64,000 nucleotides of DNA. Source: Ylistrum balloti. Lineage: Eukaryota. Positions 26,281 through 63,711 of the stretch are shown here, one piece after another (positions within the stretch are counted from its first letter, which is position 1; each line of letters begins with the position of its first letter). Made by a program: the position numbers and the translations under genes. Under the pieces are notes generated by a model. The model saw only the letters and a list, made by a program, of their open reading frames with translations. It was not told the DNA's origin and made no database searches. Location of the stretch: contig NW_026782173.1 of NCBI RefSeq assembly GCF_031769215.1, positions 2,728,001 to 2,792,000 on the forward strand, written 5' to 3'.

Positions 26281-26430
26281 TCATTCATTATTACAAGTTG
26301 TTGTCATCGATTCATCGCTCAATTTGTCATCGTCAGAATACTTGCTGGATGGCTGATTCATCGAAATTAAACGTACTGTTTCCTTGTCTGATTGCTGCCA
26401 TCTGCGTACCCTGGCATTCAGATTTCCAGA
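26281..26430 (-). CDS. MFSD1-like copy 1 terminal exon 13 (SGNLNARVRRWQQSDKETVRLI...NNE*)
   Basis: tgttttag| acceptor; homologous to the terminal exons at 49173 and 63523. Confidence 0.88.
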   Translation of the reverse strand, partial: SGNLNARVRRWQQSDKETVRLISMNQPSSKYSDDDKLSDESMTTTCNNE

Positions 26431-27507
26431 CTAAAACAGCAAAAACAGGAATAACACGGAGGTTGTATGTAGCTCATTTGGTGACCATTGATAATTCATA
26501 CCCGGTAAAAAAGCATGTCAGTGACCACTCTTATCGTGTAGAATGGAACAAATTGTAGTGATAAATGTTTTATAGTGAAAAGATAGAAGGATACAAAAAA
26601 TACTAGTCGTCCAGGTAGAGAAAGGACGTTTACCTTAAAATGTCCACAACAAGTCGCAACGTGAAGGGGAGGATCTAGGCTCTAGTAATGAAATCACAAT
26701 AGGCAATTCGACAACGAGAAAGAAAACTTTTCAGAGCGAATAGCATGTTTCGCTTATTTAGTCAATAGAAATTTTATTGATATAATGACAATTTCTTACA
26801 AACTCGATTGGTTTAGCGTAAGACTGATAAGCTAGAGGCATTTAAATGCAGTAAAAATGACGATAACAGAGATAAAAATAAAGAAATTAAACGCTTTCAA
26901 ATGAGATTCTGAACAGAATTTAAATTATCCCAAAAATTCTAGTGTTGAGTTTATAATTAATAATAATGATATTCTAGTCATGTGTTTGATTATGGTATAT
27001 CTGTTACTTGCTTTGATTGGATTAGTGGAAAAGATTGATGTTAATCGATATAAAACAAGAGAATCTTACTTTACAATATAAATATATGTGAGATATCAAA
27101 AATACTGAAGGAGAAGACGAAACGTTATCATCTTAAACAATTTATGAGTCAGATGAAAAACTACAACCAACGCCCCTGGAACATTTTAAAGAATGATTAA
27201 CGGCCAATGGGAAAAGGCTATTTTAAATTAATACAGTCAATATTTTGACACATCTTTGAATCAATAATGAAATCTCTGAAAATACAACTTGTGACTATCA
27301 TTCAATTGGGAATGCAGCAAGCTTGAAATCATACAGTTAACACAATAAAACATTTGACGGAGAAAACTTCAAGCCATTTCGTCAATGGCCGACCGTTAGG
27401 GACTGTTTCGAGATATATATCAACTTCTAGAATAAGATGAAGCCTAAAGTAAAAATGTGATACATAAATCGTCGTTCTCTTTGATATTAATATTCATTGT
27501 TATTTAC

Positions 27508-27622
27508 CTTCCGGATATCCAGCAGATTCATCATCATTCCGCAGATCACAGAAATGGCACAAAAGGTTACCAACATAAGGTTAAAATGCTTGTAATTGTG
27601 AAGTGCCTCTTCAGTGTCTGTC
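27508..27622 (-). CDS. MFSD1-like copy 1 exon 12 (TDTEEALHNYKHF...LDIRK)
   Basis: attacag|...AAG|GTAAAT, 115 nt. Confidence 0.88.
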
Positions 27623-28492
27623 CTGTAATAGGTATGACAGTGGACATACATGCAGCATATTTTCTATGCAAAATAAAGTATTATGTTGGTAACATAATTT
27701 CTGATAAAACTAATCTGAATATTGATACATGTAGCTAATTACACAAAGGTCAACTGGAATAAAGCAATACGACACAATACACACACACCAAGAACACAGA
27801 TTTAAAACTATTTAAAAGATTGGTCTATGTAAGAAGTCACAAATGCTATGAAGAAGAGGATATCGCCCAAGAAAATACACCAGAGATTTAGAAGTACAAG
27901 TATTAGCGTTGGTCAAACAAAAGTTTACCCCCACACTGCTTTATTTGTAGAATGAAAACATAGTGGAAGCATAACTCTGACAAAATTTGAGAAATGGAGG
28001 AAAAGCCGCATCAATGGACCTCATCATGTGCTAACTATAACAGCGGAGTTGTAAAATGTAAAGATAATTCTAGGATGGTTTTAAGAAACAGACAGACTGG
28101 CAGATATACATTCTTACATCGTTACAAGTTACACAAATGTAAATATATTCATATGCGAAACACTCTTAGTAACAATGGCCTTTCGTTTCATGTCCCAGGA
28201 ATTAATTTGTATTTTGCTTTTTCAGGGACATTTAGAACAGTTTTGAAAAACGTTACGTATCAGGTTTCGTTTTAACTAGTACATACAAAAATTACAATGT
28301 ACCTGGAATTTGAAGATTTATAAAAAACTAGTCGACACGCAATACAAAACCTGGAATCCTTGATTTATATTTATAAAACATAATCAAGTGGGACTGGTTT
28401 CAGCGAAAATTTCTCATGAAATAATCTGATTTTGTACTTATACTTATTTTGTCATAAACGCTAAGAATGTATCAGCACATTGATGGACTCAC

Positions 28493-28632
28493 TCGCTTTG
28501 TCTCTGTAGTATATATCCCGAGATGATGAAGGTAACCGCTAAAAATGCATTCCTCACTAGGTACATTAATCCTCCAAGTGTTCCTACATGAGAGGCGGGA
28601 CAAAGAATCAAGATGATCTGCCACGATGCCGC
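28493..28632 (-). CDS. MFSD1-like copy 1 exon 11 (AASWQIILILCPASHVGTLGG...QRQS)
   Basis: tttccag|...|GTGAGT, 140 nt. Confidence 0.88.
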
Positions 28633-29031
28633 CTGGAAACACAAGTTGAACGTCAATATTACTTTGAGAACTCGTTACGCAGTCACAACATTCAAGTGAA
28701 TGCAATATATCAAGTCCACGTACGTTAATTGGGGAAATATTTCAGCGCTAAAATCAAAGCTACTGTTCATAACGTAATTGATTTTCATTGAAGAGTAGAA
28801 CAAAATCAAAAGATATAGCCATCATTAAATTATGGTGGATAATTTCACATACTCTGAGATGTTATCATGAAAGACAATGGCCATTGAAAGGTGTAGGAAC
28901 CTATTTTAGAATGTTTTGATAAAACAGGATCAAACTAGGTTCTACTCCGAAAGAAACCACAGTGGAACGAGTCGTAGCTGCAAATCACAGATAACGACTA
29001 GCATTACAGAATACCGCCAATACCTACTTAC

Positions 29032-29171
29032 CGTCAGAGTGCCTAGGCATATTCCATCCGCCAGGGATATGGCTAAAATATTTACAGTTGAACAGAATCC
29101 TAGCAAGGCATAGAAACTAACATCAAGGATTGAAAGAACGTTAGCATTATCCCATCACAGTCAATTTTTGT
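29032..29171 (-). CDS. MFSD1-like copy 1 exon 10, frameshifted (TKIDCDGIML.../FYALLGFCS...GTLT)
   Basis: cttccag|...|GTAAGT; 140 nt versus 141 nt in copy 2; homology switches frame near 29114-29118; premature TAG at 29100-29102. Confidence 0.85.
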
Positions 29172-29541
29172 CTGGAAGGAATAAATGTTTGTACTTGGTC
29201 AACTACATCTGACCAATACATCATAAAGTTTGACGTTTGTTCAAATTAATGGTAACTTTAGATTATACAAAAAATATTTCTAAGCGAGAGGCAAGACACA
29301 TTTAACTTCAAGCCAGTGTTAATTCATATTGTTTAAAGTTCTATAACTGATCATGATCATTTAAGGAGAAAATTCCCTTATATGCGAGGTAAGATCATTG
29401 AAATAACTAAATCCAATTTTGATTTCTTTTCATAAACATTTCATAGTTCAAGTATAGTAATATCAATATAGGATAAAATGTTAAAGACACCTTCTTAGGT
29501 TATCTAATGGCAGTGAAAGGTCATGCAGTACATGTACATAC

Positions 29542-29647
29542 CAGTATAAAACAAATGAAGGGACTTAGCAGGAGAATGGTTGGAGATGCACCGGTGATAC
29601 GACTCGCATCTGTCATGGTATATCCGTATCGTAGCATCAAGTAGTTA
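29542..29647 (-). CDS. MFSD1-like copy 1 exon 9 (NYLMLRYGYTMTDASRITG...FIL)
   Basis: ttttcag|...|GTATGT, 106 nt. Confidence 0.9.
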
Positions 29648-30179
29648 CTGAAAATATATAACTTCTGGTATAATGTTATATTAGATTTCTGTCCTGAGGT
29701 CTTTCAGCATGAACGTATAATGTTCAACGATCAATGTAAACCTTTTGATAATTATATATATTGGGCCATATGTTAGGGGCCATGGATATCAATTAGAAAA
29801 TTTTAATCAAAGTCGATTTTTCCTGTTTGTAAAAATATACTTTGTCGTATTCGTTGCAGTGTCTCCTCACACACTCAACTTAACGGTAACCCGGTTTACC
29901 CTTGGTACCCTGAACTCAAACAAAACACAAGTTTGCTTTGTCACCTAAAACACGTGTACTACTGATAAATCATACAACTGCTCATACTTTATCTAAAAAG
30001 TAGGACGACAAAAATAAACAAATGGTTAAAGATGGCAAGCTTTCGGGATGGTTCAAGGTGATAGGATATACAGGCAAGTAGCTGCATGTTTTCATGTCAG
30101 CAATTCTTTTATTTCTCGGGTAATGCTGCGTTTGAACCAAACAAGAAATTTTGACTAGCATTCAAGGGCTGGCAGACTT

Positions 30180-30545
30180 CGAAAAACTACAGATAGAGAA
30201 GATAGACTTCTGTGAAGACAGACATTGCATTGAAGGCATTAACTTATAAAACTGCAATGTGCTAGTGCTGCCCGGACATGGAATATTAGGTCTTGGTGAA
30301 GCGTCCTTTGGTATTCAGAAAGCTGGTTTCTACTCTAGCATAAGGCAGGATCCGCATTTGAATACCAATAAATACGACAATACATCATTCACATTCTTGT
30401 CGAGACAGCATTTGGTGATGACTTTGTTACTGAGTGGGGATGCTAATTTCTAAGCATTGCCGCACACCTTGACGGAACTTTAAATGGGCAAAGGTATCGT
30501 GACTTGATCTGTCGACCTTTAGTTGTTCCACATTTCGGTGCCTAT
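30180..30545 (+). mobile_element. Tc1/mariner transposase remnant in copy 1 intron 8
   Basis: Broken frames read W*SVLWYSESWFLL (cf. WxxVLFSDESxF), FGDDFVTEWGC (cf. FGGGSVMVWGC) and GTLNGQRYRDLICRPLVVPHF. Confidence 0.7.
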
Positions 30546-30618
30546 CCTAACACAGACCCCGTCTGAATAAGTAAAAATAAGAAGAGTTCCAGAGGCTTAC
30601 AGTATTACCAAACATTAA

Positions 30619-31121
30619 AGGGGTATACATACAAACTTTTGGTTCTAATTTACGTTTGAAAACAACTTTGCGCAATATTTTATTTTTCCTGTATCCCGGG
30701 ATTCATGAACTTTCCGCAATTACCAAAATTTACAAGTTACGCTACCAATTTGTTTAGTTTGATTTAAGAATAAGCGCCGGGACGCGATATATTCTGTAAA
30801 GTTGTGGGCGGCGAAGAAGCAACCAAATCTCGGGCATGCGCATATCGCGCACGTGCTAATAAAGAAGAACACTGTCGCGTTCAGCCATTTTCTGCAGCAG
30901 GTGGCTGTGCAACTGTTGTGACTGCGCATGTCCCTCGTGCCAAATCCCGCGATCGGTTTTGATTGCCAGTTCATCAGCAGATTTTTTAATTGCGTAAATA
31001 AATGTGTTAGAGTTTCTTTGATTGTTTATAATATTAATGAATATTCTCTTTTAATAATTTTCTAATCGTAGTTTAATTCATTATCCGTTTGAGAGACCTT
31101 TCAGTTGGAATGTATACCCCT
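30619..31121. mobile_element. Non-autonomous DNA transposon with TTAA TSD (Kolobok-like)
   Basis: TTAA|AGGGGTATACA ... TGTATACCCCT|TTAA: perfect 11-bp TIRs and TTAA flanks. Confidence 0.8.
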
Positions 31122-31571
31122 TTAAGCATTTGTGTGAATATCGCGGACAATACGTCAATGAACGATCCAAAATACCAATAAAATGGAGAATCACTGACTG
31201 CATTGTTTCAGAAGTGGACAGATTTCCTCAGAACAAGCTTCGGTGTCCAGCCAATGGTATGAGACGGCGGGCCTAGTCATGGGCCAAGTAAACACAGAGG
31301 ATATATACATATCAATGTTTTGATTTACTATGGATAACATTATTGTCGATAGATTCAATGGAAACCTCAATTCGCTCCTTACCCTCAATTTGCTTTTGGC
31401 TAAAGGTCGAAAATGGAACCGGGAGGAAAACAGACTTCAGCGTGTTAAAAAAGAAAACAACGTATTAACTATTGCAATATCAATTTATGGGAAAAAGATT
31501 GGTATCTGCAAAAGGTGAAAATAATATCAGGACTATAACTATTTTTGAATCGTTTTATTTAGTTTTCTTAC

Positions 31572-31672
31572 GAAAGATTGGCTTGCTTGACGTTCCAACA
31601 ACTGGATGAGAATCCTACATACAGTACAAGCAGCCAGAAGGATCCCGGAAGTTCCCGTAACTCAGTCAGCGT
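31572..31672 (-). CDS. MFSD1-like copy 1 exon 8 (TLTELRELPGSFWLL...KQANL)
   Basis: ctcgtag|...|GTAAGA, 101 nt. Confidence 0.9.
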
Positions 31673-32008
31673 CTACGAGAAAATGCAACAAATCACGGTT
31701 TGTCCAAAACATCTACATAACCACTATCATCGTTTATGGTAAGCTAGGAAATGAACTAAACAAAGTAGATACGGAGATTTTGCATGACCGAGAAAAATTA
31801 ATGAGGTATATCATGATGTTCTGATCCTTAAGATGCAATACGACTCTTCGAAATAAACTTTCCCATCGCTAAACCAAAACAAAAAACCAAAAAAACAAAA
31901 AACGATTGATTAATAGAAAATAGTTGTATTTTTATGTTTTAGATTTTTATCTGGTATTTGATCTGAAGCAGCGGTGTCACAACATAATATAAAGATATAA
32001 ATTTTTAC

Positions 32009-32115
32009 CATTGTTTTGTTTTTATCCTTGTCCTCTGCTGTTATTGATGGTTGTAGGTGTAAAAGGAAAGCTAAGCCGACAGCACATAACATCGATAATC
32101 CACAGGATACTGGCC
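32009..32115 (-). CDS. MFSD1-like copy 1 exon 7 (PVSCGLSMLCAVGLAFLLHL...KTM)
   Basis: ctacag|...|GTAAAA, 107 nt. Confidence 0.88.
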
Positions 32116-32411
32116 CTGTAGAAGTTATAATACCTAAATCACAAAGACATTTGTGTGAAGGATATTTTGTTTTACGTATTCAGAACTTTCGAAGTCAGTT
32201 AATGTCCCTTGTGCTTCACTTTGACCAATCTTTCTAATTAAACCCTCCTCTGTTAGTGGTCTTCTCAGACGTGTTTATATGACAAATGGTATCCTTTACC
32301 GTAATGATTGAGGAATAACACACTGCTATGTAAAGCTTGGTGGCTTATGCTTACTCAATAAGAAAGTCATCAAAAATACACTAGAATATCTTAATACCAC
32401 CTGCTACATAC

Positions 32412-32564
32412 CTAGCCATAACGCAGGCATCAGGCCCAGACAAGTGGCAATATAAGGCGTCACATAGAGACTTATACCCTGTCCGCAATATCCTAATGAG
32501 GCAAATGCTAACGCGGTAAATGTGGCTTCTGGAAAACAATGGGCGACAACTCTTGCCTGCACCA
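32412..32564 (-). CDS. MFSD1-like copy 1 exon 6 (VQARVVAHCFPE...MPALWL)
   Basis: tccgcag|...G|GTATGT, 153 nt; 31/50 aa identical to the copy 2 exon. Confidence 0.9.
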
Positions 32565-32730
32565 CTGCGGATAAAATTTGCAACCAGATTAAAATGAACA
32601 AATTTAGATAAATTCTTTGTGTTTTAGATTATGACAACTGATTTAGAAAGTACATATAAACATTGTGTTTTATTGGTTTACGTAATCATGATGCGGTTCA
32701 AAATAATAATAATAAAAAAAGAAACATAAT

Positions 32731-32781
32731 AACCTGAGACAAACATCGTAACCTGAGACAAACATCGTAACCTGAGACAAA
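32731..32781. repeat. 19-bp tandem repeat, about 2.7 copies
   Basis: aacctgagacaaacatcgt at 32731, 32750 and 32769. Confidence 0.9.
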
Positions 32782-32876
32782 TGAGTCTACGTCATATTCT
32801 GAACATATCTAGAAATTAAAAAGTGAAATACAGAATAAAATGACAAGGCTGGTAGTAAAACATCTTAGATATGTAC

Positions 32877-33026
32877 AGCGGAGGGACATGTCTCCGAACG
32901 CCAACATGCCGTATCCACTCGCCATCAAAATGTACATAGGAGTTGTCACTGGAGCAATGGACATGGATCCCACCGCGAACAGGACTGAGCCTAACATCGA
33001 CAGTGTACTAAAAAGGACTGCAGAAC
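32877..33026 (-). CDS. MFSD1-like copy 1 exon 5 (SAVLFSTLSMLGS...AFGDMSLR)
   Basis: tgttttag|...T|GTACAT, 150 nt, same length as 54904-55053. Confidence 0.88.
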
Positions 33027-33263
33027 CTAAAACAAACACAATAATATTGATAGTATTTATGAGAAATTTATATATCATGTTCTTGTCAGAATACCAGGGG
33101 TTTGTAACCATTACGGATTCTTTAGATAGGCCACTGACAAGGACTTGGTCATTGTAACACGTGAGCTGTGTAGTTTCATCCATTCAACATTACCGGGAAA
33201 TACAAGTGAACCGTCGCAGACGTCGGTGCATGACATTACGACGATGATCAATGTCATAATGAT

Positions 33264-33598
33264 ATCATATACAAGACAACTAGTTTGTGCACTGAATGGG
33301 AAATTGAAAAAGAACAAATTGTTGTAATTGACATTGTAAGGGAATTTGCTTCGATTGACAAATGTTTCCATAGGTAATATCGTCGATGAAGTAAGAGACA
33401 CTCATCTATACGGAACATATTATCTGATCTGTAACCAAATCATATACAAGACAACTAGTTTGTGCACTGAATGGGAAATTGAAAAAGAACAAATTGTTGT
33501 AATTGACATTGTAAGGGAATTTGCTTCGATTGACAAATGTTTCCATAGGTAATATCGTCGATGAAGTAAGAGACACTCATCTATACGGAACATATTAT
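33264..33598. repeat. Identical 160-bp tandem duplication with a 15-nt junction insert
   Basis: 33264-33423 equals 33439-33598. Confidence 0.95.
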
Positions 33599-33759
33599 TT
33601 TCTTTTGCTTTTTAGGAACCCTTTCTTTCACTGGTTCCTCGTTTAAATGAATATGAATTTTAATTCGGTTGGAATATCAGTATTTCTTTGTTGTTATAGC
33701 ATGTTCCGTTGAAGAGTCACACCATGATATCTATCATTACCATGATCATTGTCATAATC

Positions 33760-34436
33760 ATTAGGAACCAGGCCTATGACCTTGAAGATTAACAACAAAA
33801 TCTTAACTGTTCTCCAACATCGTTAGGAACCAAGTCACAGACATTACAGATTGACAACAATAACTCAACTATTCTCTAACATCGTTAGGAACCAAGTCGC
33901 GGACATTGCAGATTGACAACAAAATCTCAGCTATTCTCCAACATCGTTAGGAACCATGTTACGGACATTACAGAGTGACATCCAAATCCCGACCATTGTC
34001 AAACATCATTAGGAACCATGTCGCGGATATTACCGATTGACAACAAAATCTTAACTATTCTCCAACATCGTTTGGGAACAAAGTCACGGACATTACAGAT
34101 TGACAACAAAATCTCAACTACTTTCTAACATCGTTAGGGAACCAAGTCACAGACATCACAGATTGACAACAAAAACTCAACTATTCTCTAACATCGTTAG
34201 CAACCAAGTCACGGACATTACAGTTTGACAACAAGATCTCAACTATTCTCCAACAACGTTAGGAACCAAGTCAAGGACATTACAAATTGACAACAAAATC
34301 TGAACTATTCTCCAACACCCTTAGTAACCAACTCACGGACATTGCAGATCGACAACAAAATCTCAGCTATTCTCCAACATCGTTAGGAACCATGTTACGG
34401 ACATTACAGAGTGACAACCAAATCCCGACCATTGTT
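33760..34436. repeat. 62-bp minisatellite, about 11 copies
   Basis: ttaggaaccaagtcacggacattacagattgacaacaaaatctcaactattctccaacatcg. Confidence 0.95.
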
Positions 34437-34687
34437 CCGATTGTAAGGAACTGTTGATTGACAAAATCGTATGACTATCGTTTTCACCACTTGGCGGGTA
34501 ACTATTGAATGATGCAACACTATATTCGGAAACTAAACCTACATGTACATCAAAGTGGTAATTTGGAAGCCTTCCTATAATTAACTACGTCATTTTAACC
34601 ATAAGATATTAATTAAAAATATTTGGTACGGCGTGCTCTCTTTATAAGGCACTTGTTAAATGCACATTATGCAGCTTTTGTACTTAC

Positions 34688-34743
34688 GACCGTTGCCTAG
34701 TTTGTCGAGTATGATCCCTGACGGTAGACACACTGCCACTGAT
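34688..34743 (-). CDS. MFSD1-like copy 1 exon 4 (SVAVCLPSGIILDKLGNG)
   Basis: ggttacag|...|GTAAGT, 56 nt, MFS motif-A-like DKLG. Confidence 0.9.
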
Positions 34744-36952: not shown

Positions 36953-37059
36953 GCCCATCTTGTTACGGAGAAGAGTAGGTTATAACGGACTTCTCCGAGG
37001 GCAAGACACACTTTACAGTTAATATGGTGTCCCGTATTGTTTGCTCCTGTGTTGGAATA
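36953..37059 (-). CDS. MFSD1-like copy 1 exon 3 (YSNTGANNTGHHINCKVCLALGEVRYNLLFSVTRW)
   Basis: tttacag|...|GTAAGT, 107 nt; homologous to 55905-56011. Confidence 0.9.
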
Positions 37060-37064
37060 CTGTA

Positions 37065-38906: not shown

Positions 38907-38949
38907 TTAAAACGTGCACAAAATAATAATTCAACTTCACCATACTTAC

Positions 38950-39056
38950 ATGGCTATTCATCAGTTCATTCTGAAGACCAACTGGGATTTCTAAGAAAAA
39001 ATAAACTCCAAACACCATAAAACTGTTACAGAGTAACATCCCGTAACGCCAACATG
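38950..39056 (-). CDS. MFSD1-like copy 1 exon 2 (CWRYGMLLCNSFMVFGVYFFLEIPVGLQNELMNSH)
   Basis: ttttcag|...|GTAAGT, 107 nt, TM1; homologous to 57982-58088. Confidence 0.9.
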
Positions 39057-39319
39057 CTGAAAATAGAAATGAAATGTCAGCTGTTTGAATTAAACATATC
39101 TTATTGAAAATCATTTACGAATGGATCGGGCACTAGTTATTACAACTTATGATAGCTCTTCTCATTTTTTCCTCAAATTAATTAATAACAAGTACTGTTT
39201 CCTGATTTGATGAAGTGCTGGACATGTGAAAATATTTCAGAATTATTTTCAAGAGACACATAATCATTTATATACATTAACATGTCTGAATCACATGGTG
39301 CAGGTAAATCGATAGCGAT

Positions 39320-55300: not shown

Positions 55301-58300
55301 TAGTGGAATATTGGCCTGTACGCACAGCTGGTATTGAATTTTAATGTTAATGATAATTAAATTCAGTAGCTGATTTGTCAGCTCTACGTATGTTGCATAC
55401 GCGAAACAGGTGTTAAACGAAAGATATAACAGTACGAGGATTGCCTTTTATCGCCAGAGAATCGATGAAACGAAAACATGAATTACTCCACATATCTCAA
55501 CAACTGAATCTCATATAAAATTCTATATATATGTGCTATTTTAGAACTGCTCTTGGAAGCACAATATGATCAACAGATATGACGTACTTACAACCATTTC
55601 CTAGCTTGTCGATTAACACTCCTGAGGGCAGACATACGGCTATTGAACTGTCAGTAAAATATGGGTTAAATTTAATAGTATTGGGTTTTCAAATTATTTT
55701 CATGACGGACTAAAAATTAATAATGCTTCAATGATCTTTTTATGAATGATTGGTAAGATTTGTCTACGTATGATCCCAACAACAATATATGAAAATGATT
55801 ATAAAGGCATTATTTGATAACCTGACCTCAGTAAGGTGTAATAAAATTTACTAATTCTTTAACTCTTAATGCGATGTCAATCTACGAGCCAGTTCCACAC
55901 TTACGTCCATCTTGTGACCGCGTAAAGTAGGTTATAACGGACCTCTCCGAGGCCTAGGCATACTTTACAGCCACTCTGGGTACTCGTGCCATTGGAACTG
56001 TTGAAGAATTGCTGTAAAAAAGGAAACCTTTCACATTTCGCAGTTCAGATACAAACCCATCCATTGTCGACATAAATCCTGAAAAGAATCGATCGATAAG
56101 CAGCAAAATAAATAAAGAAAAAACCGTTATCTACGACATAAAATGTTAATATAAAAATCCAACCTTCCGGAAATGATTTATGTACATTGTATGTCAGGTG
56201 TGTGTCAATTAGTGTTCTGTTGTATAATAGATCCACATTAATTAAAGCCAAATGTGATCACTATTTACTAAGTAGTATTATTGTGTGTTATGTTGTAGAG
56301 AAAACTGTGACTCTGAATTCTGTGTTGTAGCGCAATAAACAATCGAATGCCGTATCTTAATGAAAACTTATTTTTCTAGAAATACTAATTGTGAATGTAG
56401 ATATCTGTGTAGATAGGCATGGCGAACCCCACTCACCACTGTCATCAGGCTCAGAGTACAGTGGAAAGTTCGCCTTAGCCGGCGTGTCGTCAAAAGAGTT
56501 CGAACAATAGACAATTTCATCTCACCAACCAGTAGATCGTCCTCTCTGTTGAATGAAATGGATTTATTTACATTGCATTTCAGGTGAGTGTCAATTAGTG
56601 TTGTGTTGTATAATAGATCCACATTAATAACGAGCCATATGTGATCACTATTTACTGAGTAGTATTATTGCGTGTTATGTTGTAGAGAAAACAGTGACTT
56701 TGAATTCTGTGTTGTAGCGCAATAAACATATACTTGACCATAACATTGGGACCATCAAATGCTGTATTTTAATGAACACTTATTTTTCTAAAAATACTAA
56801 TTGTGAATGTAGATAGGCATGGCGAACCCCACTCACCACTGTCAACAGGCTCAGAGTACAGTGGAAAGTTCGCCTTAGCCGGCGTGTCGTCAACAGAGTT
56901 CGAACAATAGACAATTTCATCTCACCAACCAGTAGAGCGTCCTCTCTGTTGACTAAAATTCAAAAACAAGCAAGACTGTAATGGGCACGTGAACATCGGT
57001 CATACTAAGTCTTGGCGAAGTGTCAACTGGTCTGATGAAGGCTTCTTTTCACATATTCTGACAGACGGCAAGGTCCATTTTTGGAGACAAAGAAATAACG
57101 CATAACATGAGAGTCACATCTGGGCACAACAGTATTTGACTGTTTGGGAATAGCTTTTCTCTAAACTGTAGGCTACACTTACATGTCCTTGATGGAACTC
57201 TTAAATTACAGAAGTAGCAAGATTTGACCATTGTTCCGCATTTTAATACCCGTCCATTCGCAAATCGACCTACCCTAATGGATGGCAATGCAAAACCACC
57301 CGGAGCCCGGCTAGTGTAAGACTCTCTTCAATGTCGCTAGATATGGATTAAATAGAGCATGCATGGGACTATACTGGGAAAAAAGCACGGGATCCAAAAT
57401 GCCAAACAGTTGTAGAATTACGGACTGCATCAATTCAGGAGCCTCTCAGTAATGATATAAAAGACACACAAGTGAATAGCGTCTTTCAATACAAATTTCG
57501 AATATAATACAGGAGAGTCAAATAAAATGGTTCACTTATCAGGACCCGTCAATAATGCTTGGGAATAAAATTTTAAAACTTCGCAAGTCACTGAGAGGAA
57601 AATCCAAATTAATAAAAAAAAGGACATAATCTAGAAAGGAAGATGCATGCTGTGGCGTCTGGTCAATGGTATGAGACGACGAGCATAATATTTTTACAAG
57701 AAACGTGGTGGCTATGCTAGATATTGACATTTTCATACAAAAAAGGACCTGTTTTGGAAATGTCATTTTCAACAACTCTTTTTGAAATGATACAATACTG
57801 CTGGTTCCTTAGATTTCTTTTCCTATCGGTATTTATCTATCCTCTTATATTGCCATTGAGAGTTTTTCTTAAATAAAACAAAGAAAATTCAAACCAATCT
57901 AAGATATGAGTGATCCCGAACTTATGGCCAAGTATATGTCTGAGAGGTGATATTTCACTGACTAGATATTTGCATACTTACATGATTATACATGATCTCA
58001 CGTTGCAGTGCATTTGCGGTTTCTATGAAATAATAAACTCCCAAAATCATCAAACTGTTGCAAAATAACACTCCATATCGCCAACATTCTGACAAATTAA
58101 AAAACAGAAATATCTCGATATAGCAAAGTAGATTTTAGATTTTGATTTTGGGTTTTATCCAGTGTAATCATACGGTTTCATTTTCTCACACGTCGTATTG
58201 AAGTGTCATTTTTGTGATAGTCTGCAACTTAAAAGGCTGCCTTCGTTTTATCATTTTGAATTTTAGAGGTTGTTTTAAAAATAGCGCTGATATTTCTGTC

Positions 58301-61008
58301 CTGTCCTGCAGCTGTAAAGTTAAAGGTAATGTATTTTGTAACTTTTGAAAAATGATTAATTCAGCTGAAAAGCATGCTATTTATAACAACCACTTGTTGA
58401 ATAAGTTTTAAGTACTGTATTCATGTGATAGATATGCTAGAAAATGAGGTTAATGTTAAACATGGACGAGCACGCCAAAACCAGTAAGTATGTAGCTATC
58501 TCTTAAATTTAGTGAACAGAGAAGAAACCGATAAAATATATCTTACATCAGTCAAAAGTGTGGCTTTCTTCAGATTTTCATTAGCGACACCAGTTTTTCA
58601 CTAAAGTGAAGAATAAAAGGAGCATTGTTCGCTGTCTAACAGTACGATGAGCAGAGACATTTAGAAACAAACATTAATCGGTCTACAATTTGCTACGACA
58701 CTACAGGTAGCCCGGCCAAGGTAGGAAGATCAATTTCTTTTTTTGTCATGATTCAACGTTAATCATTTTGTGGTTAAGTTCTACTTATCAAACCCCTTTT
58801 AGCAATGACCGACTTTTTTAGTTATTATATCACGTACTAACAATGATTGCTCTACAATAATTTTTGATGAAAAGATACTAACGAGTAAATATAGGGATTG
58901 GATATAACGTGCCCCATTAAGAATATATTCATATATTCCATATAAAAGCGTGGTTAACATTAAACTAAACTCCTATCTCCATGTATCAATGTATCGATCA
59001 ATTATTAAGATAGCAAAGCAAAATTAATATACTGTAATGTGTTATCAGTCAACAACACAGTCCAGATTCAAATGGAGATTGTACAAGAGACACAAGTCAA
59101 TAGCACATTTTGTTAAATAACATTCAGGCCAGATACAGTACAGGCAATATACAGCTATTATACAGCAGTTTTTTTTCATTCTAGGACTCGCCAGTGACGC
59201 TAAGGTCCTAAATATTGTCAGCATGAAAAAGGCCACACCCAGATGTGAGTGTTTAAGTCTACCTTCAACATGTTGCTTGTTACGCATCAGTAATACCACA
59301 GGCCGAGCTCCTGAAGAAAGGAGACATTATGTTTACGTCACAACACACCTTTGAGAAGATATGACCTCGTGTCTTCTTCACAATGCTATACCTGTCAGAG
59401 CGATAGAGTAATGTCTCATTTCACTATATTTACCCGGCAGAGCGTGAGACCGAATGTCTGCTTAAATAACTAACAACTACCCACCATTCATGATATCAAA
59501 TCAAATTCTAGTTTAAAGAATGACACTGGTCAGAGTCTGTTATAATTTGTCAAAACATTAGATCATATGTCTAGCTTAAAGTATGGCACAAAGTCCAGAA
59601 ATTTGTATGATATTCATGTACCTATTTTAATGTTATTTGTCAATGCCCGACACACAAAGAGACAAGAGTCAGACTTTATCGAGAATAAAATAAAGGTGGT
59701 TAAGTTTATTGTTTATTGATAAAGACCACTTGAGTGCGATGTTTCAGACAATGAATTCATTAAAACTTTTTTTCTAGATCAACCGAACATGAGAGGCAAT
59801 AAAAAGCATATACTAAATGTACTAACCACCGCTATGATATCACTTTGACTGGAGCCTTATAACAGTGATGCACAGTTATGATTAACGTGTGTTTAAGGAA
59901 ATGCAAATCGTTCCTATTTAGAAGATTGTAATTAGTTATTCTCCTGTATGCAATGGTAGATATAAGAACATATCATAATCCAAATTTTATAAATCTAGGG
60001 CAAAATATGAACAAAAGAAGGAAGACTTCTGAAAAAGTTAAAAGGGAATAAGATCAGGTGTTCTAGAAGAGTAAGTGTCTTCCGCTTCATTGACAACATC
60101 CGTAATCTTGGTCAATCCAGGTAAGAGTAATGCTACGTCCGCAAATGAAACAAGGAAACCAACAAGCAAAACTAACGTATATCAAACACACCAAGTTTCA
60201 TGTTGTGACGTAATGGTATATGGAGTTAAACAGAATTGAAAAATCAAATGCCTTCATAAAAATGTTTTAAGAAGATATTGAAAATTGGTTAAAAACTCTT
60301 CGAAGTTCTTTAGAATCTAAATACTATTAATTCGACGTCATGAGTAAAAAGTACAGTACTAAGATTGTTGGTTAGTAGTTCAGACAAAGGCTTGATTGAT
60401 AAGCTAGATGAGCCAGCAATAAAACGTTGTTTATATAAGATTCTTGTAGAATCTGGATAATTAGAAAAAATTCTTATCAAGATTGCACAAAGTAGTTCAT
60501 GCAAGTGCACATGCTTCTAAACAAGAAAGTCATACAATTAGCTTCTACTGACAAACATGAAGAATGATAACTATACAGGAATCACATGTGACTACGCCAA
60601 TATTGGATATAGAAATTTAAAATCGTATTCATATACACATGTATTATGATAGAAATATCGTTATTGTACTTGCAGTCAAACATTAAAGTCAAGCGTAACG
60701 ACAAAAACAACATTGTTATCAGCCACCAATTCCACATTTGATATCTCTATTCAAGTTATCATTTTAGTTTTGCTAAGACTACCTTTTCGGAATTTAATAA
60801 CGATAATGACATCAGAGCTAATATAAGGTGACATGGTCGGAAAATCTACTTGTAAGTAAATATTCAAATGCATTGTAATAACATCATCAAAAATTCAAAC
60901 TCTACACATACAGACCATATATAGTCTTACCTGTCATCGTCAGTCAGCGCACTCACCTTTAGTACAGATAAGTACCCGTTGTTGGTTGATATGAAAATAA
61001 ATCGCCAT
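49173..61008 (-). CDS. MFSD1-like: MFSD1-like MFS transporter copy 2; 13 exons, 1485 nt, about 494 aa, apparently intact
   Basis: Exons 61008-60957, 58088-57982, 56011-55905, 55647-55592, 55053-54904, 54430-54278, 53898-53795, 53030-52930, 51870-51765, 51358-51218, 50129-49990, 49807-49693 and 49325-49173 splice in frame without stops. Intron phases are identical to copy 1. Exon 1 is tentative. Confidence 0.9.
49693..49807 (-). CDS. MFSD1-like copy 2 exon 12 (IEKEVELRRYQYFF...LDVRK)
   Basis: ttcatag|...AAG|GTGTTT, 115 nt, same length as copy 1. Confidence 0.87.
49990..50129 (-). CDS. MFSD1-like copy 2 exon 11 (VMMWQLLVALSPPKYVGTLGG...EKGD)
   Basis: atattag|...|GTAAGT, 140 nt. Confidence 0.9.
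51218..51358 (-). CDS. MFSD1-like copy 2 exon 10 (KNIDCDGIM...GITILT)
   Basis: attacag|...ACG|GTAAGG, 141 nt; donor position confirmed by copy 1. Confidence 0.9.
51765..51870 (-). CDS. MFSD1-like copy 2 exon 9 (DYLQLRYGYTMSEASYITG...SVL)
   Basis: attacag|...|GTAAGT, 106 nt. Confidence 0.9.
52044..52456. mobile_element. HINE/Helentron-like non-autonomous element in copy 2 intron 8
   Basis: 13-bp inverted ends TGTGTCGCCTGCC / GGCAGGCGACACA; terminal hairpin GTCGCC-N6-GGCGAC; internal gtgaccttg...gaccttt motif. Confidence 0.65.
52930..53030 (-). CDS. MFSD1-like copy 2 exon 8 (TLRQICMLPVSYWL...KQVNL)
   Basis: ctttcag|...|GTAAGA, 101 nt. Confidence 0.9.
53795..53898 (-). CDS. MFSD1-like copy 2 exon 7 (AVICGFGVVCAVGLAFLLHI...KML)
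   Basis: tttacag|...|GTAAGA, 104 nt. Confidence 0.9.
54278..54430 (-). CDS. MFSD1-like copy 2 exon 6 (VQTRVVALCFPE...VPAVVL)
   Basis: atttcag|...G|GTAAAA, 153 nt. Confidence 0.9.
54904..55053 (-). CDS. MFSD1-like copy 2 exon 5 (SAILFSILPLIGS...AFGDGALR)
   Basis: Long pyrimidine tract ttctag|...T|GTATGT, 150 nt. Confidence 0.9.
55592..55647 (-). CDS. MFSD1-like copy 2 exon 4 (SIAVCLPSGVLIDKLGNG)
   Basis: ctgacag|...|GTAAGT, 56 nt. Confidence 0.9.
55905..56011 (-). CDS. MFSD1-like copy 2 exon 3 (QFFNSSNGTSTQSGCKVCLGLGEVRYNLLYAVTRW)
   Basis: ttttacag|...|GTAAGT, 107 nt. Confidence 0.9.
56171..56952. repeat. Tandem duplication of about 390-400 bp in copy 2 intron 2, containing an exon-like block
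   Basis: 56171-56553 resembles 56555-56952. Confidence 0.93.
57982..58088 (-). CDS. MFSD1-like copy 2 exon 2 (CWRYGVLFCNSLMILGVYYFIETANALQREIMYNH)
   Basis: ttgtcag|...|GTAAGT, 107 nt. Confidence 0.9.
60044..60510 (-). mobile_element. Internally deleted Penelope-like (Naiad-type) element
   Basis: YKQRFIAGSSSLSIKPLSELLT (RT N-terminal motif, cf. PYKQRxIAGSSKCSTKPLS) joined to the C-terminus MKLGVFDIR* and the shared 3' motif. Confidence 0.75.
60957..61008 (-). CDS. MFSD1-like copy 2 tentative first coding exon (MAIYFHINQQRVLICTK)
   Basis: gtcATGG start and phase-1 donor AAG|GTGAGT fit exon 2; no similarity to copy 1 exon 1. Confidence 0.45.
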
Positions 61009-62244
61009 GACGGTAACCCGTCACGGATAAGTTAACATTTGAAATAGTGCATATTTTTCCATACTGTACTTTAGTACACAATTTTTTTATACAAACTATT
61101 ATCTCTCTATTATTCAGCAATAAGCTTGGCTAGTTATCACTTTCACTTTGTACATACATGCAAGTGAGTGATACTTGAAAGAACGAAAAAATGGATTGAA
61201 ATTTTAGATATAAAAAAATGTTCAATATGATATTTCAATTACATGCGTTTTGCGATCGCAGAGATAAGGTTTGGAACTGTAGAGTACATAGATTTAATAA
61301 TCTTTAAGAGGATCCAACAACATAAAAGTTCTATATTATAATCTAACTGCTATAATTTTTGCTACACATGCTTTATACACCGTAGAGTGACATCTGTTGA
61401 ATTTATATGCATAATTAATCTGATCTATGTTCCAAAGAAGATGTTCTGTATAACTGAACATTATTCGATATTAAATGTAATAACGTAATGCAATATCGCC
61501 ATCGAGAGAGAGTGGGAAGGTCGGGTTCCGATTTAGTTCACATGAATGGCTGTGGAAAAAACGTGTCAAAAAGTCAAGGTAAATCAAATTTCTCTTTAGA
61601 ATCGTTACATGGCAGAAGCGATTTATGTGAAGCATAAACTAAATGTTCAGTCTTTTTTCTTCATAGCACAAGTGTTTGAGTTAAGTGTCTGAACAATAAG
61701 TCATTATGTACTTTCACACATGGTTAGACAAAATATCAGTATCAGTATTTAAATCAGTATGGTCAGTAATATCAGAAATAACGACCATAGGTAAAATATA
61801 TTTTGATGTAGATAAACGACATAAAAAGACATTATAATAATAAATGCCGAACAAAAAAGATATCACATTGCCTTTTATGACTTATCATCCTTATCGCTTT
61901 CATCTAAAAGTCACCGGAGCGTTAAGTACGAATATATCAGAGCTTACCGAACGCGTCAGAGTGTAATCTTCTTACAGAATATTGTGCTTTCCTTACTGCA
62001 CCGGGTAAGATGCAGGTTGATGAAGACTGTAGAGAAGTCAGGTCGACATCATAATGTCGGGTTATGAGGACTTTTGTGACTGGTTCAGCGATTTAATTAT
62101 TCAGTGTTATAAGACACTTAAAGTATAACATGTGGGTGTAAATGTAGGATACCACTTTAAACAGATATCAAATTATTTTCGTTGAAAACCACAAGATATT
62201 GCATGTGTAATATAGATCATGTACATGATTTCTTGTAGTGTGAA

Positions 62245-62335
62245 GAATAAGGCCAGGTGCTCCGGAAGATTAAGCGTCTCTTTGCTTCATCGATGACATC
62301 CGTCATGTAACACTTGGCCGATAGTAATGGCATTT
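62245..62335 (-). mobile_element. Penelope-like (Naiad-type) 3' terminal fragment
   Basis: gaataaggccaggtgctccggaagattaagcgtctctttgcttcatcgatgacatccgtc matches the copies at 4920 and 60050. Confidence 0.7.
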
Positions 62336-62479
62336 TGACGATCGTAAAACTTCCCAATGATTTTCATCAATCGGCATCTTTTGAATGCTTTTTTTTTTCT
62401 TGCGCGAACATCGGGATAATGGGAACAGAACCTTGAATTTGCATAAAAAAAAGTTGCTATTAGCTGGTGTATCTGTTGT

Positions 62480-62950
62480 TTCCGATCTATGCTTTATGAA
62501 ATGCTGTTGACGTTATCACGATATCCGTGCGAGAATTCGTCATCTGATGGACAAACTCTTAACACAGGGGTTCAAATGGTGCGGTTTGATGAAAATTGTG
62601 GGATTCTTTTATAGTCGCAATAGTGATCCCATTGAGACTTTTGTATATCTTTATGTGATGTTAAGCGGGACTTGTTTGGTGTTCGTTAGTTTACATATTG
62701 GTTCCGTTGTTGTATACTTTGTTCTCATTTGATATAGTGACATTTCTTACTTGGATTGACCAAAGTATGCATGACGGGAGTCGTTGATGAAGTAGAGGGC
62801 ATTTACTTTTCCGGAACACCTAGTCTTATTCTTGTCACTTTTCTAGAGTATCCGTTTAAATCGTTCTTTTGTTCGTATTTTGCCCTACTTTATGAAATCT
62901 GAGTTTGAATTATGACTTATCATATTGGTATTTTGTTGTTGCTGTGTTAC
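62480..62950 (+). mobile_element. Penelope-like (Naiad-type) 3' fragment
   Basis: RYHDIRARIRHLMDKLLTQGFKWCGLMKIVGFFYSRNSDPIETF (cf. KLLNQGF...LRKFYGRHHDL) followed by ...ttccggaacacctagtcttattc; a shorter copy of this end lies at 40945-41035. Confidence 0.72.
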
Positions 62951-63522
62951 GAGTATGAAAGAATATCTTTGTTTTTCACGAATGCAAAGTACGTATATAG
63001 ATATAGATATAAAAATATAAATATATTCTGCAATACTCGTGAAATATATGAAGAACAAGTAAGAAATAAGAAAAGTCGATCCAAACATAAATTAAAGCTG
63101 TATTCAACAAGTATTAAACATGTTTTTTTGACATGGGATAGTTTGATATTATATAAGGCGATGTCATATTTAATTGGATGTTTTTCGTTGTATTCTACCA
63201 TTTGGTACAAAACTGTTTTATATCCAAAATTAGAGAAAGACCAGAAGTGTAAATGGAATGTGTTTGATAGAAAACGGACTTATTCTACCTTCGATTCATT
63301 TGCAGTTTACCAAGAGAGAGGAATCACACAACAACAAATAAGTGTGAAATAATTTCGTTTTTTTATTTGTGTAGTCAAAAAGTACGAAAGTTACTGGAAA
63401 AGTTATATCATCACCGACAAAATATAAAGGCATGATCCATCTAAAAACACGTGTTTTTAATTTTTTTTTTTCATGTGACTGTTCACGGGGTAGCTGAAGT
63501 GTAATCCCACAATAACTAGGCA

Positions 63523-63711
63523 TCAATTCGTCTTCCCCAATAAATCATCATTACATACGCTGGTTGCAGCAGGCGGGTCATTGGTCATTGTGTCGACATT
63601 TGTAGACTTCATTCTGAAATAGTTGCTGGACGGTTGAACCATTGACAAAAGTCCTATAGCTTCGATATTGCTTTGCTTCCATTTGCCTATTCTAGAATTT
63701 AGGACGCTGGT
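63523..63711 (-). CDS. MFSD1-like: Terminal exon of a third MFSD1-like paralog (TSVLNSRIGKWKQSNIEAIGLL...KTN*); rest of gene beyond the window
   Basis: tgtttcag| acceptor; LNSRIxxWxxSNxExIGL shared with the copy 2 terminal exon. Confidence 0.82.
   Translation of the reverse strand, partial: TSVLNSRIGKWKQSNIEAIGLLSMVQPSSNYFRMKSTNVDTMTNDPPAATSVCNDDLLGKTN

What the first reader, a model, noticed from the sequence alone, without database searches (positions are those of the whole stretch)
26281..63711. Tandem expansion of a divergent MFSD1-like transporter subfamily hidden from the ORF track
Seen: at least three same-strand paralogs. Copies 1 and 2 share all intron phases and most exon lengths yet are well diverged (for example 31/50 aa identical in exon 6). 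Established: vertebrate MFSD1 is a single-copy lysosomal dipeptide uniporter partnered with GLMP. Inference: an old, retained local expansion with new functions, for example in intracellular or lysosomal digestion, sitting directly upstream of an SLC5 nutrient symporter on the same strand. This is the best candidate in the window for an undescribed system.
Basis: partly seen in the sequence, partly recalled or inferred. Interest (0 to 1): 0.7.

Follow-up and report, generated by a model that had tools for sequence, protein, structure and literature searches.

The report
Scallop tandem array of MFSD1-like transporters
This stretch of scallop (Ylistrum balloti) genome holds three neighbouring copies of an old, scallop-specific offshoot of the lysosomal dipeptide transporter MFSD1 that has lost MFSD1's peptide-gripping residues; it is a real gene-family expansion of moderate interest, not a new kind of system.

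Summary
Three paralogous genes of 12 mapped coding exons lie head to tail on the minus strand. Copy 1 is at 26281-39056, copy 2 at 49173-58088, and only the last two exons of copy 3 are in the window (63523-63940).

The genome is Ylistrum balloti. The three copies belong to an array of five full genes plus a fragment spanning about 75 kb, and two more members lie on other contigs.

The family is MFSD1-related. A profile of this subfamily hits only mouse MFSD1 in the PDB (E 3e-21). The true MFSD1 ortholog sits elsewhere, on contig C685. The window genes fall in a mollusc-wide "MFSD1-like" clade, within a subclade found only in scallops. The paralogs each have orthologs in Pecten, Mizuhopecten or Argopecten, dS is saturated, and dN/dS is 0.16-0.35, so the expansion is old and retained.

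Compared with MFSD1, this subfamily:
- lacks the N-terminal EDRALL tail;
- lacks Glu150, Arg181, Tyr276 and Tyr365 of the dipeptide site;
- has a roughly 20-residue CxxC loop with N-glycosylation sequons;
- carries a C-terminal [DE]xxxL[LIMV] motif.

Copy 1 is frameshifted in one exon as assembled. RefSeq already names relatives "MFSD1-like". The scan holds another first-reader note (s1-240817) on this same stretch.

The parts
26281..39771 (-). Copy 1 (c1), an MFSD1-like gene. It has 12 mapped coding exons plus a candidate 10-nt coding start, and is frameshifted in exon H2 as assembled.
39762..39771 (-). c1 candidate exon-1 coding part (ATG + 7 nt, then a GTAAGC donor). Inferred only.
   Evidence: by analogy with the annotated exon 1 of the C491 paralog
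38950..39056 (-). c1 exon A (TM1)
36953..37059 (-). c1 exon B (loop 1 with an NNT sequon and CKVC, then the start of TM2)
34688..34743 (-). c1 exon C (TM2, the LDKLGNG motif)
32877..33026 (-). c1 exon D (TM3-TM4; 'GDM' where MFSD1 has 'GGE150')
32412..32564 (-). c1 exon E (TM5; no Arg at the R181 position).
32009..32115 (-). c1 exon F (TM6)
31572..31672 (-). c1 exon G (TM7)
29542..29647 (-). c1 exon H (TM8)
29032..29171 (-). c1 exon H2 (TM9-TM10). It is 140 nt instead of 141, a 1-nt deletion near exon position 50-54, which gives an in-frame TAG.
28493..28632 (-). c1 exon I (TM10 end and TM11)
27508..27622 (-). c1 exon J (TM12)
26281..26430 (-). c1 exon K (C-terminal tail with ETVRLI; stop at 26281-26283)
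49173..60937 (-). Copy 2 (c2), an MFSD1-like gene. All 12 mapped exons are in frame with no stop (476 aa without exon 1).
60931..60937 (-). c2 candidate exon-1 coding part (ATGACAG, then GTAAGA). The context resembles the annotated exon 1 of the C491 paralog. Inferred only.
57982..58088 (-). c2 exon A
55905..56011 (-). c2 exon B (NSS and NGT sequons, CKVC)
55592..55647 (-). c2 exon C
54904..55053 (-). c2 exon D
54278..54430 (-). c2 exon E
53795..53898 (-). c2 exon F
52930..53030 (-). c2 exon G
51765..51870 (-). c2 exon H
51218..51358 (-). c2 exon H2 (141 nt, intact)
49990..50129 (-). c2 exon I
49693..49807 (-). c2 exon J
49173..49325 (-). c2 exon K (tail with ESIGLM; stop at 49173-49175)
63826..63940 (-). 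Copy 3 (c3) exon J. Exons A-I lie beyond the window end, at C316:2792178-2801636.
63523..63711 (-). c3 exon K (tail with EAIGLL; stop at 63523-63525)
14810..24005 (-). Neighbouring SLC5-type (Pfam SSF) symporter gene, directly downstream of c1 on the same strand. No functional link is shown.

Best explanation

SHOWN:
- The genome is Ylistrum balloti.
- Copies 2 and 3 are intact genes of 12 mapped coding exons. Copy 1 is intact except for a 1-nt deletion in one exon.
- With two more genes and a fragment just beyond the window, they form an array of about 75 kb on contig C316. Two further members lie on contigs C491 and C242.
- The genome also holds at least 8 more distant 'MFSD1-like' loci and one canonical MFSD1 ortholog (C685), plus a GLMP gene.
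- The window genes belong to a strongly supported Pectinidae-only subclade of a mollusc-wide MFSD1-like clade. That clade sits beside canonical MFSD1.
- Individual paralogs have orthologs in other scallop genera, so the duplications predate those genera. Coding sequences evolved under purifying selection.
- Relative to MFSD1, this subfamily has only about 3-5 residues before TM1, so it has no EDRALL lysosomal sorting motif.
- It has a roughly 20-residue insert in the first luminal/extracellular loop, with CxxC and 1-3 N-glycosylation sequons.
- It has no Glu at position 150 (Gly, with Asp at 149) and no Arg at 181. Tyr59, Tyr276 and Tyr365 are lost.
- It has new conserved charged residues: Asp in TM10 ('ADG'), Lys after TM7 ('KQxNLP') and Arg in TM11.
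- It has a conserved [DE]xxxL[LIMV] motif in the C-terminal tail.

INFERRED:
- The proteins work as ordinary rocker-switch MFS carriers.
- The C-terminal acidic-dileucine-like motif directs them to endosomes/lysosomes or related vesicles.
- The rebuilt, differently charged cavity means their substrate is no longer a generic dipeptide but some other small polar or charged solute.
- The several paralogs divide this role by tissue or substrate.
For: Species and model check:
- Contig lengths of C491, C108 and C194 equal those carrying Ylistrum balloti RefSeq proteins.
- My C491 gene model equals XP_060076526.1.

Gene structure: conserved splice sites and phases in all paralogs.

Family:
- Pfam MFS_1 matches on relatives.
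- PDB search with the C491 paralog hits only 8r8q_A (MFSD1), E 7.5e-6.
- A subfamily-only profile hits only 8r8q_A, E 3.4e-21.
- The AF2 model has pLDDT 82 and Foldseek ranks 8r8q_A first.

Canonical ortholog elsewhere: an exon on C685 matches MFSD1 at E 2.7e-27, about 70% identity.

Tree: mollusc clade 100/99, scallop subclade 100/100, c1 with Pecten P0024 100/99, the C491 copy with Pecten P0026 100/99.

Narrow distribution: only 22 hits at E <= 1e-3 among 1.84 billion representatives; every hit that carries a species name is a bivalve, mostly a scallop.

Age and constraint: dS 1.1-2.3, dN/dS 0.16-0.35. Pecten maximus has a matching multi-copy cluster.

Residues, loop and tail: read against the MFSD1 site and motif as published (PMC11252000; PMC6819133).

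GLMP gene present.

Expression of a member: the c5 ortholog P0008 sits as an uninterrupted 467-aa ORF on a 1770-nt Logan contig of run SRR23580857. That is only possible for spliced mRNA.
Against:
- Copy 1 is frameshifted as assembled, so at least one copy may be dead.
- No protein of the C316 array surfaced in the protein searches. This may mean the copies are not annotated, or only that the word index missed them.
- Vertebrate MFSD1 itself could not be placed in the tree. Only the scallop canonical gene (partial, 326 aa) and a fungal homolog represent it, and the fungal branch is long.
- Residue correspondences around R181 rest on alignments at about 20% identity. MAFFT and HMMER differ by one to two columns there, although neither places a basic residue at that position.
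- Asp149 might substitute for Glu150.
- A [DE]xxxL[LIMV] match is short and could be coincidental, although it is positionally conserved across the clade.
Confidence: 0.72

Rival explanations
1. The genes are still lysosomal dipeptide or oligopeptide exporters like MFSD1. They were simply duplicated for dosage or tissue-specific expression in an animal with heavy intracellular digestion, with no real change of substrate class.
For: MFSD1 is the only detectable solved relative. The fold and many helix-packing motifs are conserved. An acidic residue (Asp149) lies next to the Glu150 position. A dileucine-type motif is retained, although at the other terminus.
Against: Arg181, which with Glu150 gives the bipolar site that holds the two peptide termini (PMC11252000), has no basic counterpart in c1-c4, c6 and c7. 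Tyr59, Tyr276, Tyr365, Gln393 and Gln396 are also replaced. A canonical MFSD1 with all these residues is kept elsewhere in the genome.
Confidence: 0.15
2. The array is largely decaying. The window copies are unexpressed or pseudogenised leftovers of an old expansion, and only a few family members (for example the annotated C491 gene) are functional.
For: Copy 1 carries a frameshift and a premature TAG. Exon fragments of further copies exist at C316:2817811-2818090 and C491:592618-593515. No C316 protein surfaced in the database searches. A retroelement fragment sits in a c1 intron.
Against: Copies 2 and 3 (and c4, c5, c7) have all mapped exons open with canonical splice sites at conserved positions. 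This holds despite saturated synonymous divergence and dN/dS of 0.16-0.35, which is not expected of long-dead genes. Copy 1 has only one lesion and an intact Pecten ortholog.
Confidence: 0.1
3. The genes belong to a different, already characterised MFS family (for example sialin/SLC17, SLC37, SPNS or FLVCR), and the resemblance to MFSD1 is generic MFS similarity.
For: Foldseek gives nearly equal TM-scores to many MFS structures. Single exons match no Pfam family or PDB chain.
Against: With a subfamily profile, MFSD1 is the only PDB chain at E <= 0.1 (3.4e-21), although those other families are in the PDB. The more conservative paralog d3 hits MFSD1 at 3.8e-25, against 2.5e-3 for the next chain. 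The tree joins the clade to canonical MFSD1 against bacterial MFS proteins with 100/100 support.
Confidence: 0.03

Closest known systems
Vertebrate MFSD1, the lysosomal dipeptide uniporter that works with GLMP (PDB 8R8Q; PMC11252000, PMC6819133, PMC10990142)
   Same: Both have the 12-helix MFS fold. MFSD1 is the only solved structure detectable by sequence and the top structural match. Shared motifs include the TM2-TM3 'G(F/Y)LID(R/K)xG', Tyr56, Gln156, Trp373 and the TM11 'GT'. A GLMP gene exists in the same genome.
   Different: The window genes are not the ortholog; that is on contig C685. There are many copies instead of one. There is no N-terminal tail with EDRALL. A loop-1 insert of about 20 aa carries CxxC and N-glycosylation sequons, whereas MFSD1 is not glycosylated. 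Glu150, Arg181, Tyr59, Tyr276, Tyr365, Gln393 and Gln396 are replaced. New Asp (TM10), Lys (after TM7) and Arg (TM11) appear. The dileucine-type motif is at the C-terminus.
RefSeq 'major facilitator superfamily domain-containing protein 1-like' / 'lysosomal dipeptide transporter MFSD1-like' models of scallops, e.g. XP_060076526.1 (Ylistrum balloti), XP_033754815.1 (Pecten maximus), XP_021348060.1 (Mizuhopecten yessoensis)
   Same: XP_060076526.1 belongs to the same Pectinidae subclade as the window genes and shares their exon structure, loop, tail and residue changes. It is the paralog on C491, about 53-55% identical to copies 1-3. XP_033754815.1 (P0006, d1-type) and XP_021348060.1 (P0016, d3-type) belong to the neighbouring d-type subclades of the same mollusc clade. 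They share the 12-exon layout, the Cys-rich glycosylated loop and the C-terminal motif.
   Different: These are automatic names without any study. The window copies are distinct paralogs, and the d-type models keep Arg181, Tyr276 and Tyr365. No paper in the searchable library describes the mollusc clade or its expansion.
The more conservative mollusc MFSD1-like genes ('d-type': Ylistrum C108, C194 and others; oyster, clam and chiton homologs)
   Same: They share the 12-exon layout, with introns at the same positions and phases. They share the inserted Cys-rich glycosylated loop 1, Gly at position 150, the short N-terminus and the C-terminal [DE]xxxL[LIMV].
   Different: The d-type genes keep Arg181, Tyr276 and Tyr365, have 4-5 loop cysteines (C..CC..C), and occur across molluscs. 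The window's c-type genes have lost those residues, keep only CxxC, and were found only in Pectinidae.

Membership tests
Major facilitator superfamily (Pfam MFS_1, PF07690) | Significant match to the MFS_1 profile and a 12-helix two-bundle fold | tested here: met
   The paralog P0001 (53-55% identical to the window copies) matches MFS_1 at E 1.4e-13. Its AF2 model has pLDDT 82 and pTM 0.82 with 12 long helices, and more than 400 MFS structures match it. Single exons of the window copies gave no Pfam hit by themselves. The joined window models were not submitted to any tool.
MFSD1 family in the broad sense (homologs of the lysosomal dipeptide transporter) | MFSD1 is the closest characterised relative, ahead of other MFS families | tested here: met
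   A subfamily-only profile hits 8r8q_A alone at E 3.4e-21, with nothing else at E <= 0.1. The single sequence P0001 hits 8r8q_A alone at 7.5e-6. 8r8q_A is Foldseek rank 1. The clade joins canonical MFSD1 against bacterial MFS proteins with 100/100 support.
MFSD1 proper (ortholog of vertebrate MFSD1) | One-to-one orthology with vertebrate MFSD1 | tested here: not met
   The canonical ortholog is at C685:154251-162608; one exon matches mouse MFSD1 at about 70% identity, E 2.7e-27. The window genes lie in a separate mollusc clade on a long stem.
MFSD1 proper | Bipolar dipeptide site: Glu150 (TM4) and Arg181 (TM5), with Tyr56/59, Gln176, Tyr276, Phe280, Tyr365, Trp373, Gln393/396, Asn397 (PMC11252000) | tested here: not met
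   In c1-c3, position 150 is Gly or Met (with Asp at 149). There is no basic residue at or beside position 181. Tyr59 becomes Ile/Leu/Met, Tyr276 becomes Ser/Thr, and Tyr365 is lost in c2 and c3 (that exon is missing from the c1 model). Gln393 becomes Tyr/Phe and Gln396 becomes Arg or Val. Tyr56 and Trp373 are mostly kept (c3 has Phe56 and Pro at 373). The alignment is at about 20% identity, so exact columns near 181 are uncertain.
MFSD1 proper | N-terminal cytosolic dileucine motif (EDRALL, aa 7-12) needed for lysosomal sorting (PMC6819133) | tested here: not met
   The annotated paralog starts MEA, followed directly by TM1. Candidate first exons of c1-c4 and c7 code for 3-5 residues. A [DE]xxxL[LIMV] motif is found in the C-terminal tail instead.
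MFSD1 proper | Not N-glycosylated; stabilised and shielded by the glycoprotein GLMP | not testable with these tools
   Loop 1 carries 1-3 NxS/T sequons plus CxxC in every copy, and a GLMP (Pfam NCU-G1) gene exists at C93:2004268-2009717. Glycosylation and partnership need experiments.
Mollusc 'MFSD1-like' clade, Pectinidae c-type subclade | Shared 12-exon layout, CxxCLGLG loop insert, 'GDG' in TM4, 'ADG' in TM10, 'KQxNLP' after TM7, C-terminal ExxxL[LIM]; monophyly with scallop sequences only | tested here: met
   c1, c2 and c3 fall within the 100/100 subclade of 16 sequences. Every named sequence is from Ylistrum, Pecten, Mizuhopecten or Argopecten; the exception is P0008, a Logan transcript of unnamed origin.

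The most novel reading that the evidence does not exclude
Scallops evolved a self-sufficient branch of the MFSD1 family. In this reading the proteins carry their own glycan and disulfide shield in loop 1 and so no longer need GLMP. They reach endolysosomal or digestive vesicles through a C-terminal instead of an N-terminal dileucine signal. They use a re-charged cavity (Asp in TM10, Lys after TM7, Arg in TM11) to export a class of digestion products other than dipeptides. The tandem paralogs would be specialised for different substrates or tissues of an animal that digests food intracellularly.
Probability: 0.15. Interest if true: 0.55.

Novelty: new variant of a known kind. Interest (0 to 1): 0.35.

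Why it matters
MFSD1 was deorphanised only in 2024 and is single-copy in vertebrates. A mollusc clade with at least 15 paralogs in one scallop genome is a natural experiment on this transporter. One subfamily of that clade has swapped the residues that hold the dipeptide termini and moved the sorting signal. It could show how the transporter's substrate site, its need for the GLMP partner and its targeting can change. It could also point to solutes exported during intracellular digestion in bivalves. For genome annotation, the practical points are that the C316 array holds several intact genes, and that one copy may be a pseudogene or an assembly error.

Tried and rejected
- Pfam scan of single exon translations found nothing meaningful.
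- PDB search with single exons of the window copy and of the C194 paralog gave nothing, or spurious Kelch-repeat matches.
- Read-through of two exons across a short intron, to get a longer stop-free query, failed because both candidates contain stops.
- The three word-index protein searches (P0001, P0016, profile A3) never reached vertebrate MFSD1; beyond molluscs they returned only a fungal homolog and bacterial MFS proteins. Vertebrate MFSD1 is therefore represented in the tree only by the scallop canonical gene and that fungal homolog.
- The paralog comparison of upstream regions did not reveal exon 1. The reason became clear later: exon 1 codes for only 2-4 residues.
No read-level check of expression, splicing or the copy-1 frameshift was possible, and read laying was not used.
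- The spliced (joined) protein models of the window copies were built and compared only inside scripts. They were not submitted to any search, fold or family tool; those steps were done exon by exon or with the annotated paralog P0001 as proxy.
- Considered and rejected: membership of another MFS family, and a wholesale pseudogene array.
- A functional link to the SLC5 neighbour has no evidence beyond adjacency.

Full report
**What is there**

A six-frame self-comparison of the window showed collinear series of similar short open segments on the minus strand. One series lies at 26.3-39.1 kb and a second at 49.2-58.1 kb. The start of a third lies at 63.5-64.0 kb.

Splice-site analysis gave 12 coding exons per gene, which I label A, B, C, D, E, F, G, H, H2, I, J and K. 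AG/GT sites sit at homologous positions and all intron phases are identical. Copy 2 joins into an uninterrupted reading frame of 476 codons.

Copies 1, 2 and 3 are 51-55% identical to one another.

Downstream of copy 1 on the same strand lies an SLC5-type gene, with Pfam SSF matches at 14810-24005. The one correction is that the common strand is the minus strand, and that only the last two exons of copy 3 are inside the window.

**Where the window comes from, and how far the array goes**

The window is contig C316:2728001-2792000 of a 648-Mb assembly. Searching the assembly and fetching flanks showed the following:
- Copy 3 continues to C316:2801636.
- Two more complete genes follow: c4 on the plus strand at 2805182-2811370, and c5 on the minus strand at 2821588-2828961.
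- An exon fragment lies at 2817811-2818090.
- Two more close paralogs lie on other contigs: c6 on C491 and c7 on C242.

A profile of exon D searched against 1.84 billion representative proteins found only 22 proteins at E <= 1e-3. Every hit that carries a species name is from a bivalve, mostly a scallop.

The best hit, XP_060076526.1 'MFSD1-like [Ylistrum balloti]', sits on a contig of exactly the length of C491. From residue 4 onward it is identical to my model of c6. This identifies the genome as the saucer scallop Ylistrum balloti and validates the exon models.

It also explains why exon 1 could not be found by comparison: it codes for only Met-Glu and one base. Candidates of the same form, ATG plus 4-13 nt and then GTAAG, lie 0.2-2.9 kb upstream of exon A in c1-c4 and c7. 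These are inferred, not shown.

**Family**

Single exons match nothing in Pfam or the PDB, but full-length relatives do:
- Ten relatives all match Pfam MFS_1.
- The c6 protein hits one PDB chain only, 8r8q_A (mouse MFSD1), at E 7.5e-6.
- A profile built only from this scallop subfamily hits the same chain alone at E 3.4e-21, with no other MFS structure at E <= 0.1.
- A more conservative Ylistrum paralog (d3 on C108) hits MFSD1 at 3.8e-25, against 2.5e-3 for the next chain.
- An AlphaFold2 model of c6 (pLDDT 82, pTM 0.82) has the MFS fold, and Foldseek ranks 8r8q_A first, though by a small margin over many MFS structures.

These genes are not the MFSD1 ortholog. Using a fungal homolog as a probe, the canonical gene was found at C685:154251-162608. 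One of its exons is about 70% identical to mouse MFSD1 (E 2.7e-27). A GLMP (Pfam NCU-G1) gene is also present, on C93.

**Phylogeny and age**

I built a maximum-likelihood tree of 43 proteins. It used my spliced models built only inside scripts, RefSeq and transcript-derived relatives, the partial canonical scallop gene, a fungal homolog and two bacterial MFS proteins as outgroup. The tree shows:
- All mollusc 'MFSD1-like' proteins form one clade (100/99) on a long stem beside canonical MFSD1.
- The window genes fall in a subclade (100/100) in which every named sequence is from Pectinidae; the one unnamed member is a transcript-derived protein, P0008.
- c1 groups with Pecten maximus P0024 and Argopecten proteins (100/99).
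- c6 groups with Pecten P0026 (100/99), and c5 with the transcript-derived protein P0008.
- c4 and c7 are a younger Ylistrum pair.

The duplications that produced c1, c2, c3, c5 and c6 therefore predate the divergence of these scallop genera.

Nei-Gojobori estimates give dS of 1.1-2.3 (saturated) and dN/dS of 0.16-0.35 for all pairs. For c4 vs c7, dS is 0.37.

In Pecten maximus, the orthologous region of chromosome LR736838.1 (41.75-41.88 Mb) also holds several full and partial copies in both orientations.

A search with d3 found further, more conservative family loci on C108 (two), C194, C122, C88, C876 and C383. The genome thus has at least 15 MFSD1-like genes besides the canonical one.

**How the subfamily differs from MFSD1**

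The published MFSD1 features are as follows:
- The binding site comprises Tyr56, Tyr59, Glu150, Gln176, Arg181, Tyr276, Phe280, Tyr365, Trp373, Gln393, Gln396, Asn397 and Leu400. Glu150 and Arg181 hold the peptide termini (PMC11252000).
- The sorting motif EDRALL lies at residues 7-12, and MFSD1 is not N-glycosylated (PMC6819133).

Numbering was anchored on the canonical scallop gene, whose motifs are near-identical to mouse.

The whole mollusc clade shows these differences:
- Gly at position 150.
- Loss of Tyr59.
- A short N-terminus.
- An insert of about 20 residues in loop 1 with cysteines and 1-3 NxS/T sequons.
- A positionally conserved [DE]xxxL[LIMV] in the C-terminal tail.

The conservative d-type genes keep Arg181, Tyr276 and Tyr365. 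The scallop c-type genes of the window differ further:
- They lack a basic residue at or next to position 181. Only the c5 lineage keeps it.
- They have lost Tyr276 and Tyr365.
- Gln393 and Gln396 are replaced.
- They carry Asp at position 149.
- They have new conserved charges: Asp in TM10 ('ADG'), Lys after TM7 ('KQxNLP') and, in most copies, Arg in TM11.

MAFFT and HMMER place the columns around 181 one or two positions apart, but neither finds an Arg or Lys there.

**Interpretation**

Shown: this is an old, tandemly arrayed, scallop-specific subfamily of MFSD1 homologs under purifying selection. Its substrate cavity is rebuilt and its terminal motifs are rearranged.

Inferred, with moderate confidence:
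- The proteins are rocker-switch carriers of endolysosomal or related vesicles, sorted by the C-terminal acidic-dileucine-like motif.
- Their substrate differs from generic dipeptides.

The idea recorded in another first-reader note on this stretch (s1-240817), that the glycosylated CxxC loop makes them independent of GLMP, is compatible with the loop features I confirmed. It is untested.

**Status of the copies**

Copies 2 and 3 are intact over all mapped exons, as are c4, c5 (exons A to J), c6 and c7.

Copy 1 has a single lesion. Exon H2 (window 29032-29171) is 140 nt, against 141 nt in all paralogs and in its Pecten ortholog. The missing base lies near exon position 50-54, and an in-frame TAG follows. 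No in-phase alternative acceptor rescues the frame. This is either a young pseudogene, a polymorphism or an assembly error.

Direct expression evidence exists only for a relative. The c5 ortholog P0008 is an uninterrupted 467-aa ORF on a 1.77-kb contig of run SRR23580857, i.e. spliced mRNA.

**Novelty**

RefSeq already labels the relatives 'MFSD1-like'. Lineage-specific expansions of transporter genes are common in bivalves. No paper in the searchable library mentions a mollusc MFSD1-like clade or its expansion.

I rate this a new variant of a known kind, of moderate interest. The family assignment and the age of the expansion are solid. The functional shift is a sequence-based inference.

**Limits**

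- Vertebrate MFSD1 could not be included in the tree.
- The canonical scallop sequence used is partial, built from tblastn segments.
- The fungal branch is long.
- The joined models of the window genes were used only inside scripts, not in any search or folding tool. The fold and the PDB profile rest on annotated paralogs and orthologs.

Noticed in passing
window 37447-38151 (+): A 234-aa open frame with a reverse-transcriptase domain (Pfam RVT_1, E 4e-20) lies inside the intron between exons A and B of copy 1, on the opposite strand. It is a retroelement fragment.
   Followed up: partly
window 41752-43221 and 44228-45696: A tandem duplication of about 2.5 kb (93-98% identical, spacing about 2475 nt) lies in the spacer between copies 1 and 2. 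A 62-nt minisatellite follows at 46059-46554.
   Followed up: partly
window 15636-16841, 9159-9704, 11457-11875, 2528-3196, 33786-34424: Several minisatellites with periods of 28/118, 22, 34, 27/81 and 62 nt. The first lies within the span of the SLC5 gene and the last lies in a copy-1 intron.
   Followed up: no
G000:C316:2817811-2818090 (+) and G000:C491:592618-593515 (+): Isolated exon fragments of further family copies (H2 and I; D and part of H/H2). They are probably remnants of degraded duplicates.
   Followed up: no
L024 (Pecten maximus LR736838.1:41750626-41781504): The RefSeq protein at this locus (P0002, 236 aa, 'uncharacterized') is much shorter than the locus suggests, since all 12 family exons are present there. 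L022 holds an unannotated partial copy upstream of P0024 and another copy in opposite orientation downstream.
   Followed up: partly
upstream regions of c2, c3, c4, c6 and d2 (e.g. C316:2787998-2788181, 2804026-2804404, 2799508-2799747): A shared short repeated element, translated in one frame as '..EAEDAYSS.. KQKTLTLPEH..', recurs near the 5' ends of several family genes. It is probably a dispersed repeat.
   Followed up: no
G000:C685:154251-162608 (-) and G000:C93:2004268-2009717 (-): These are the canonical MFSD1 ortholog and a GLMP (NCU-G1) gene of Ylistrum balloti. The canonical gene has a different exon layout, with TM1-TM3 in one exon.
   Followed up: partly
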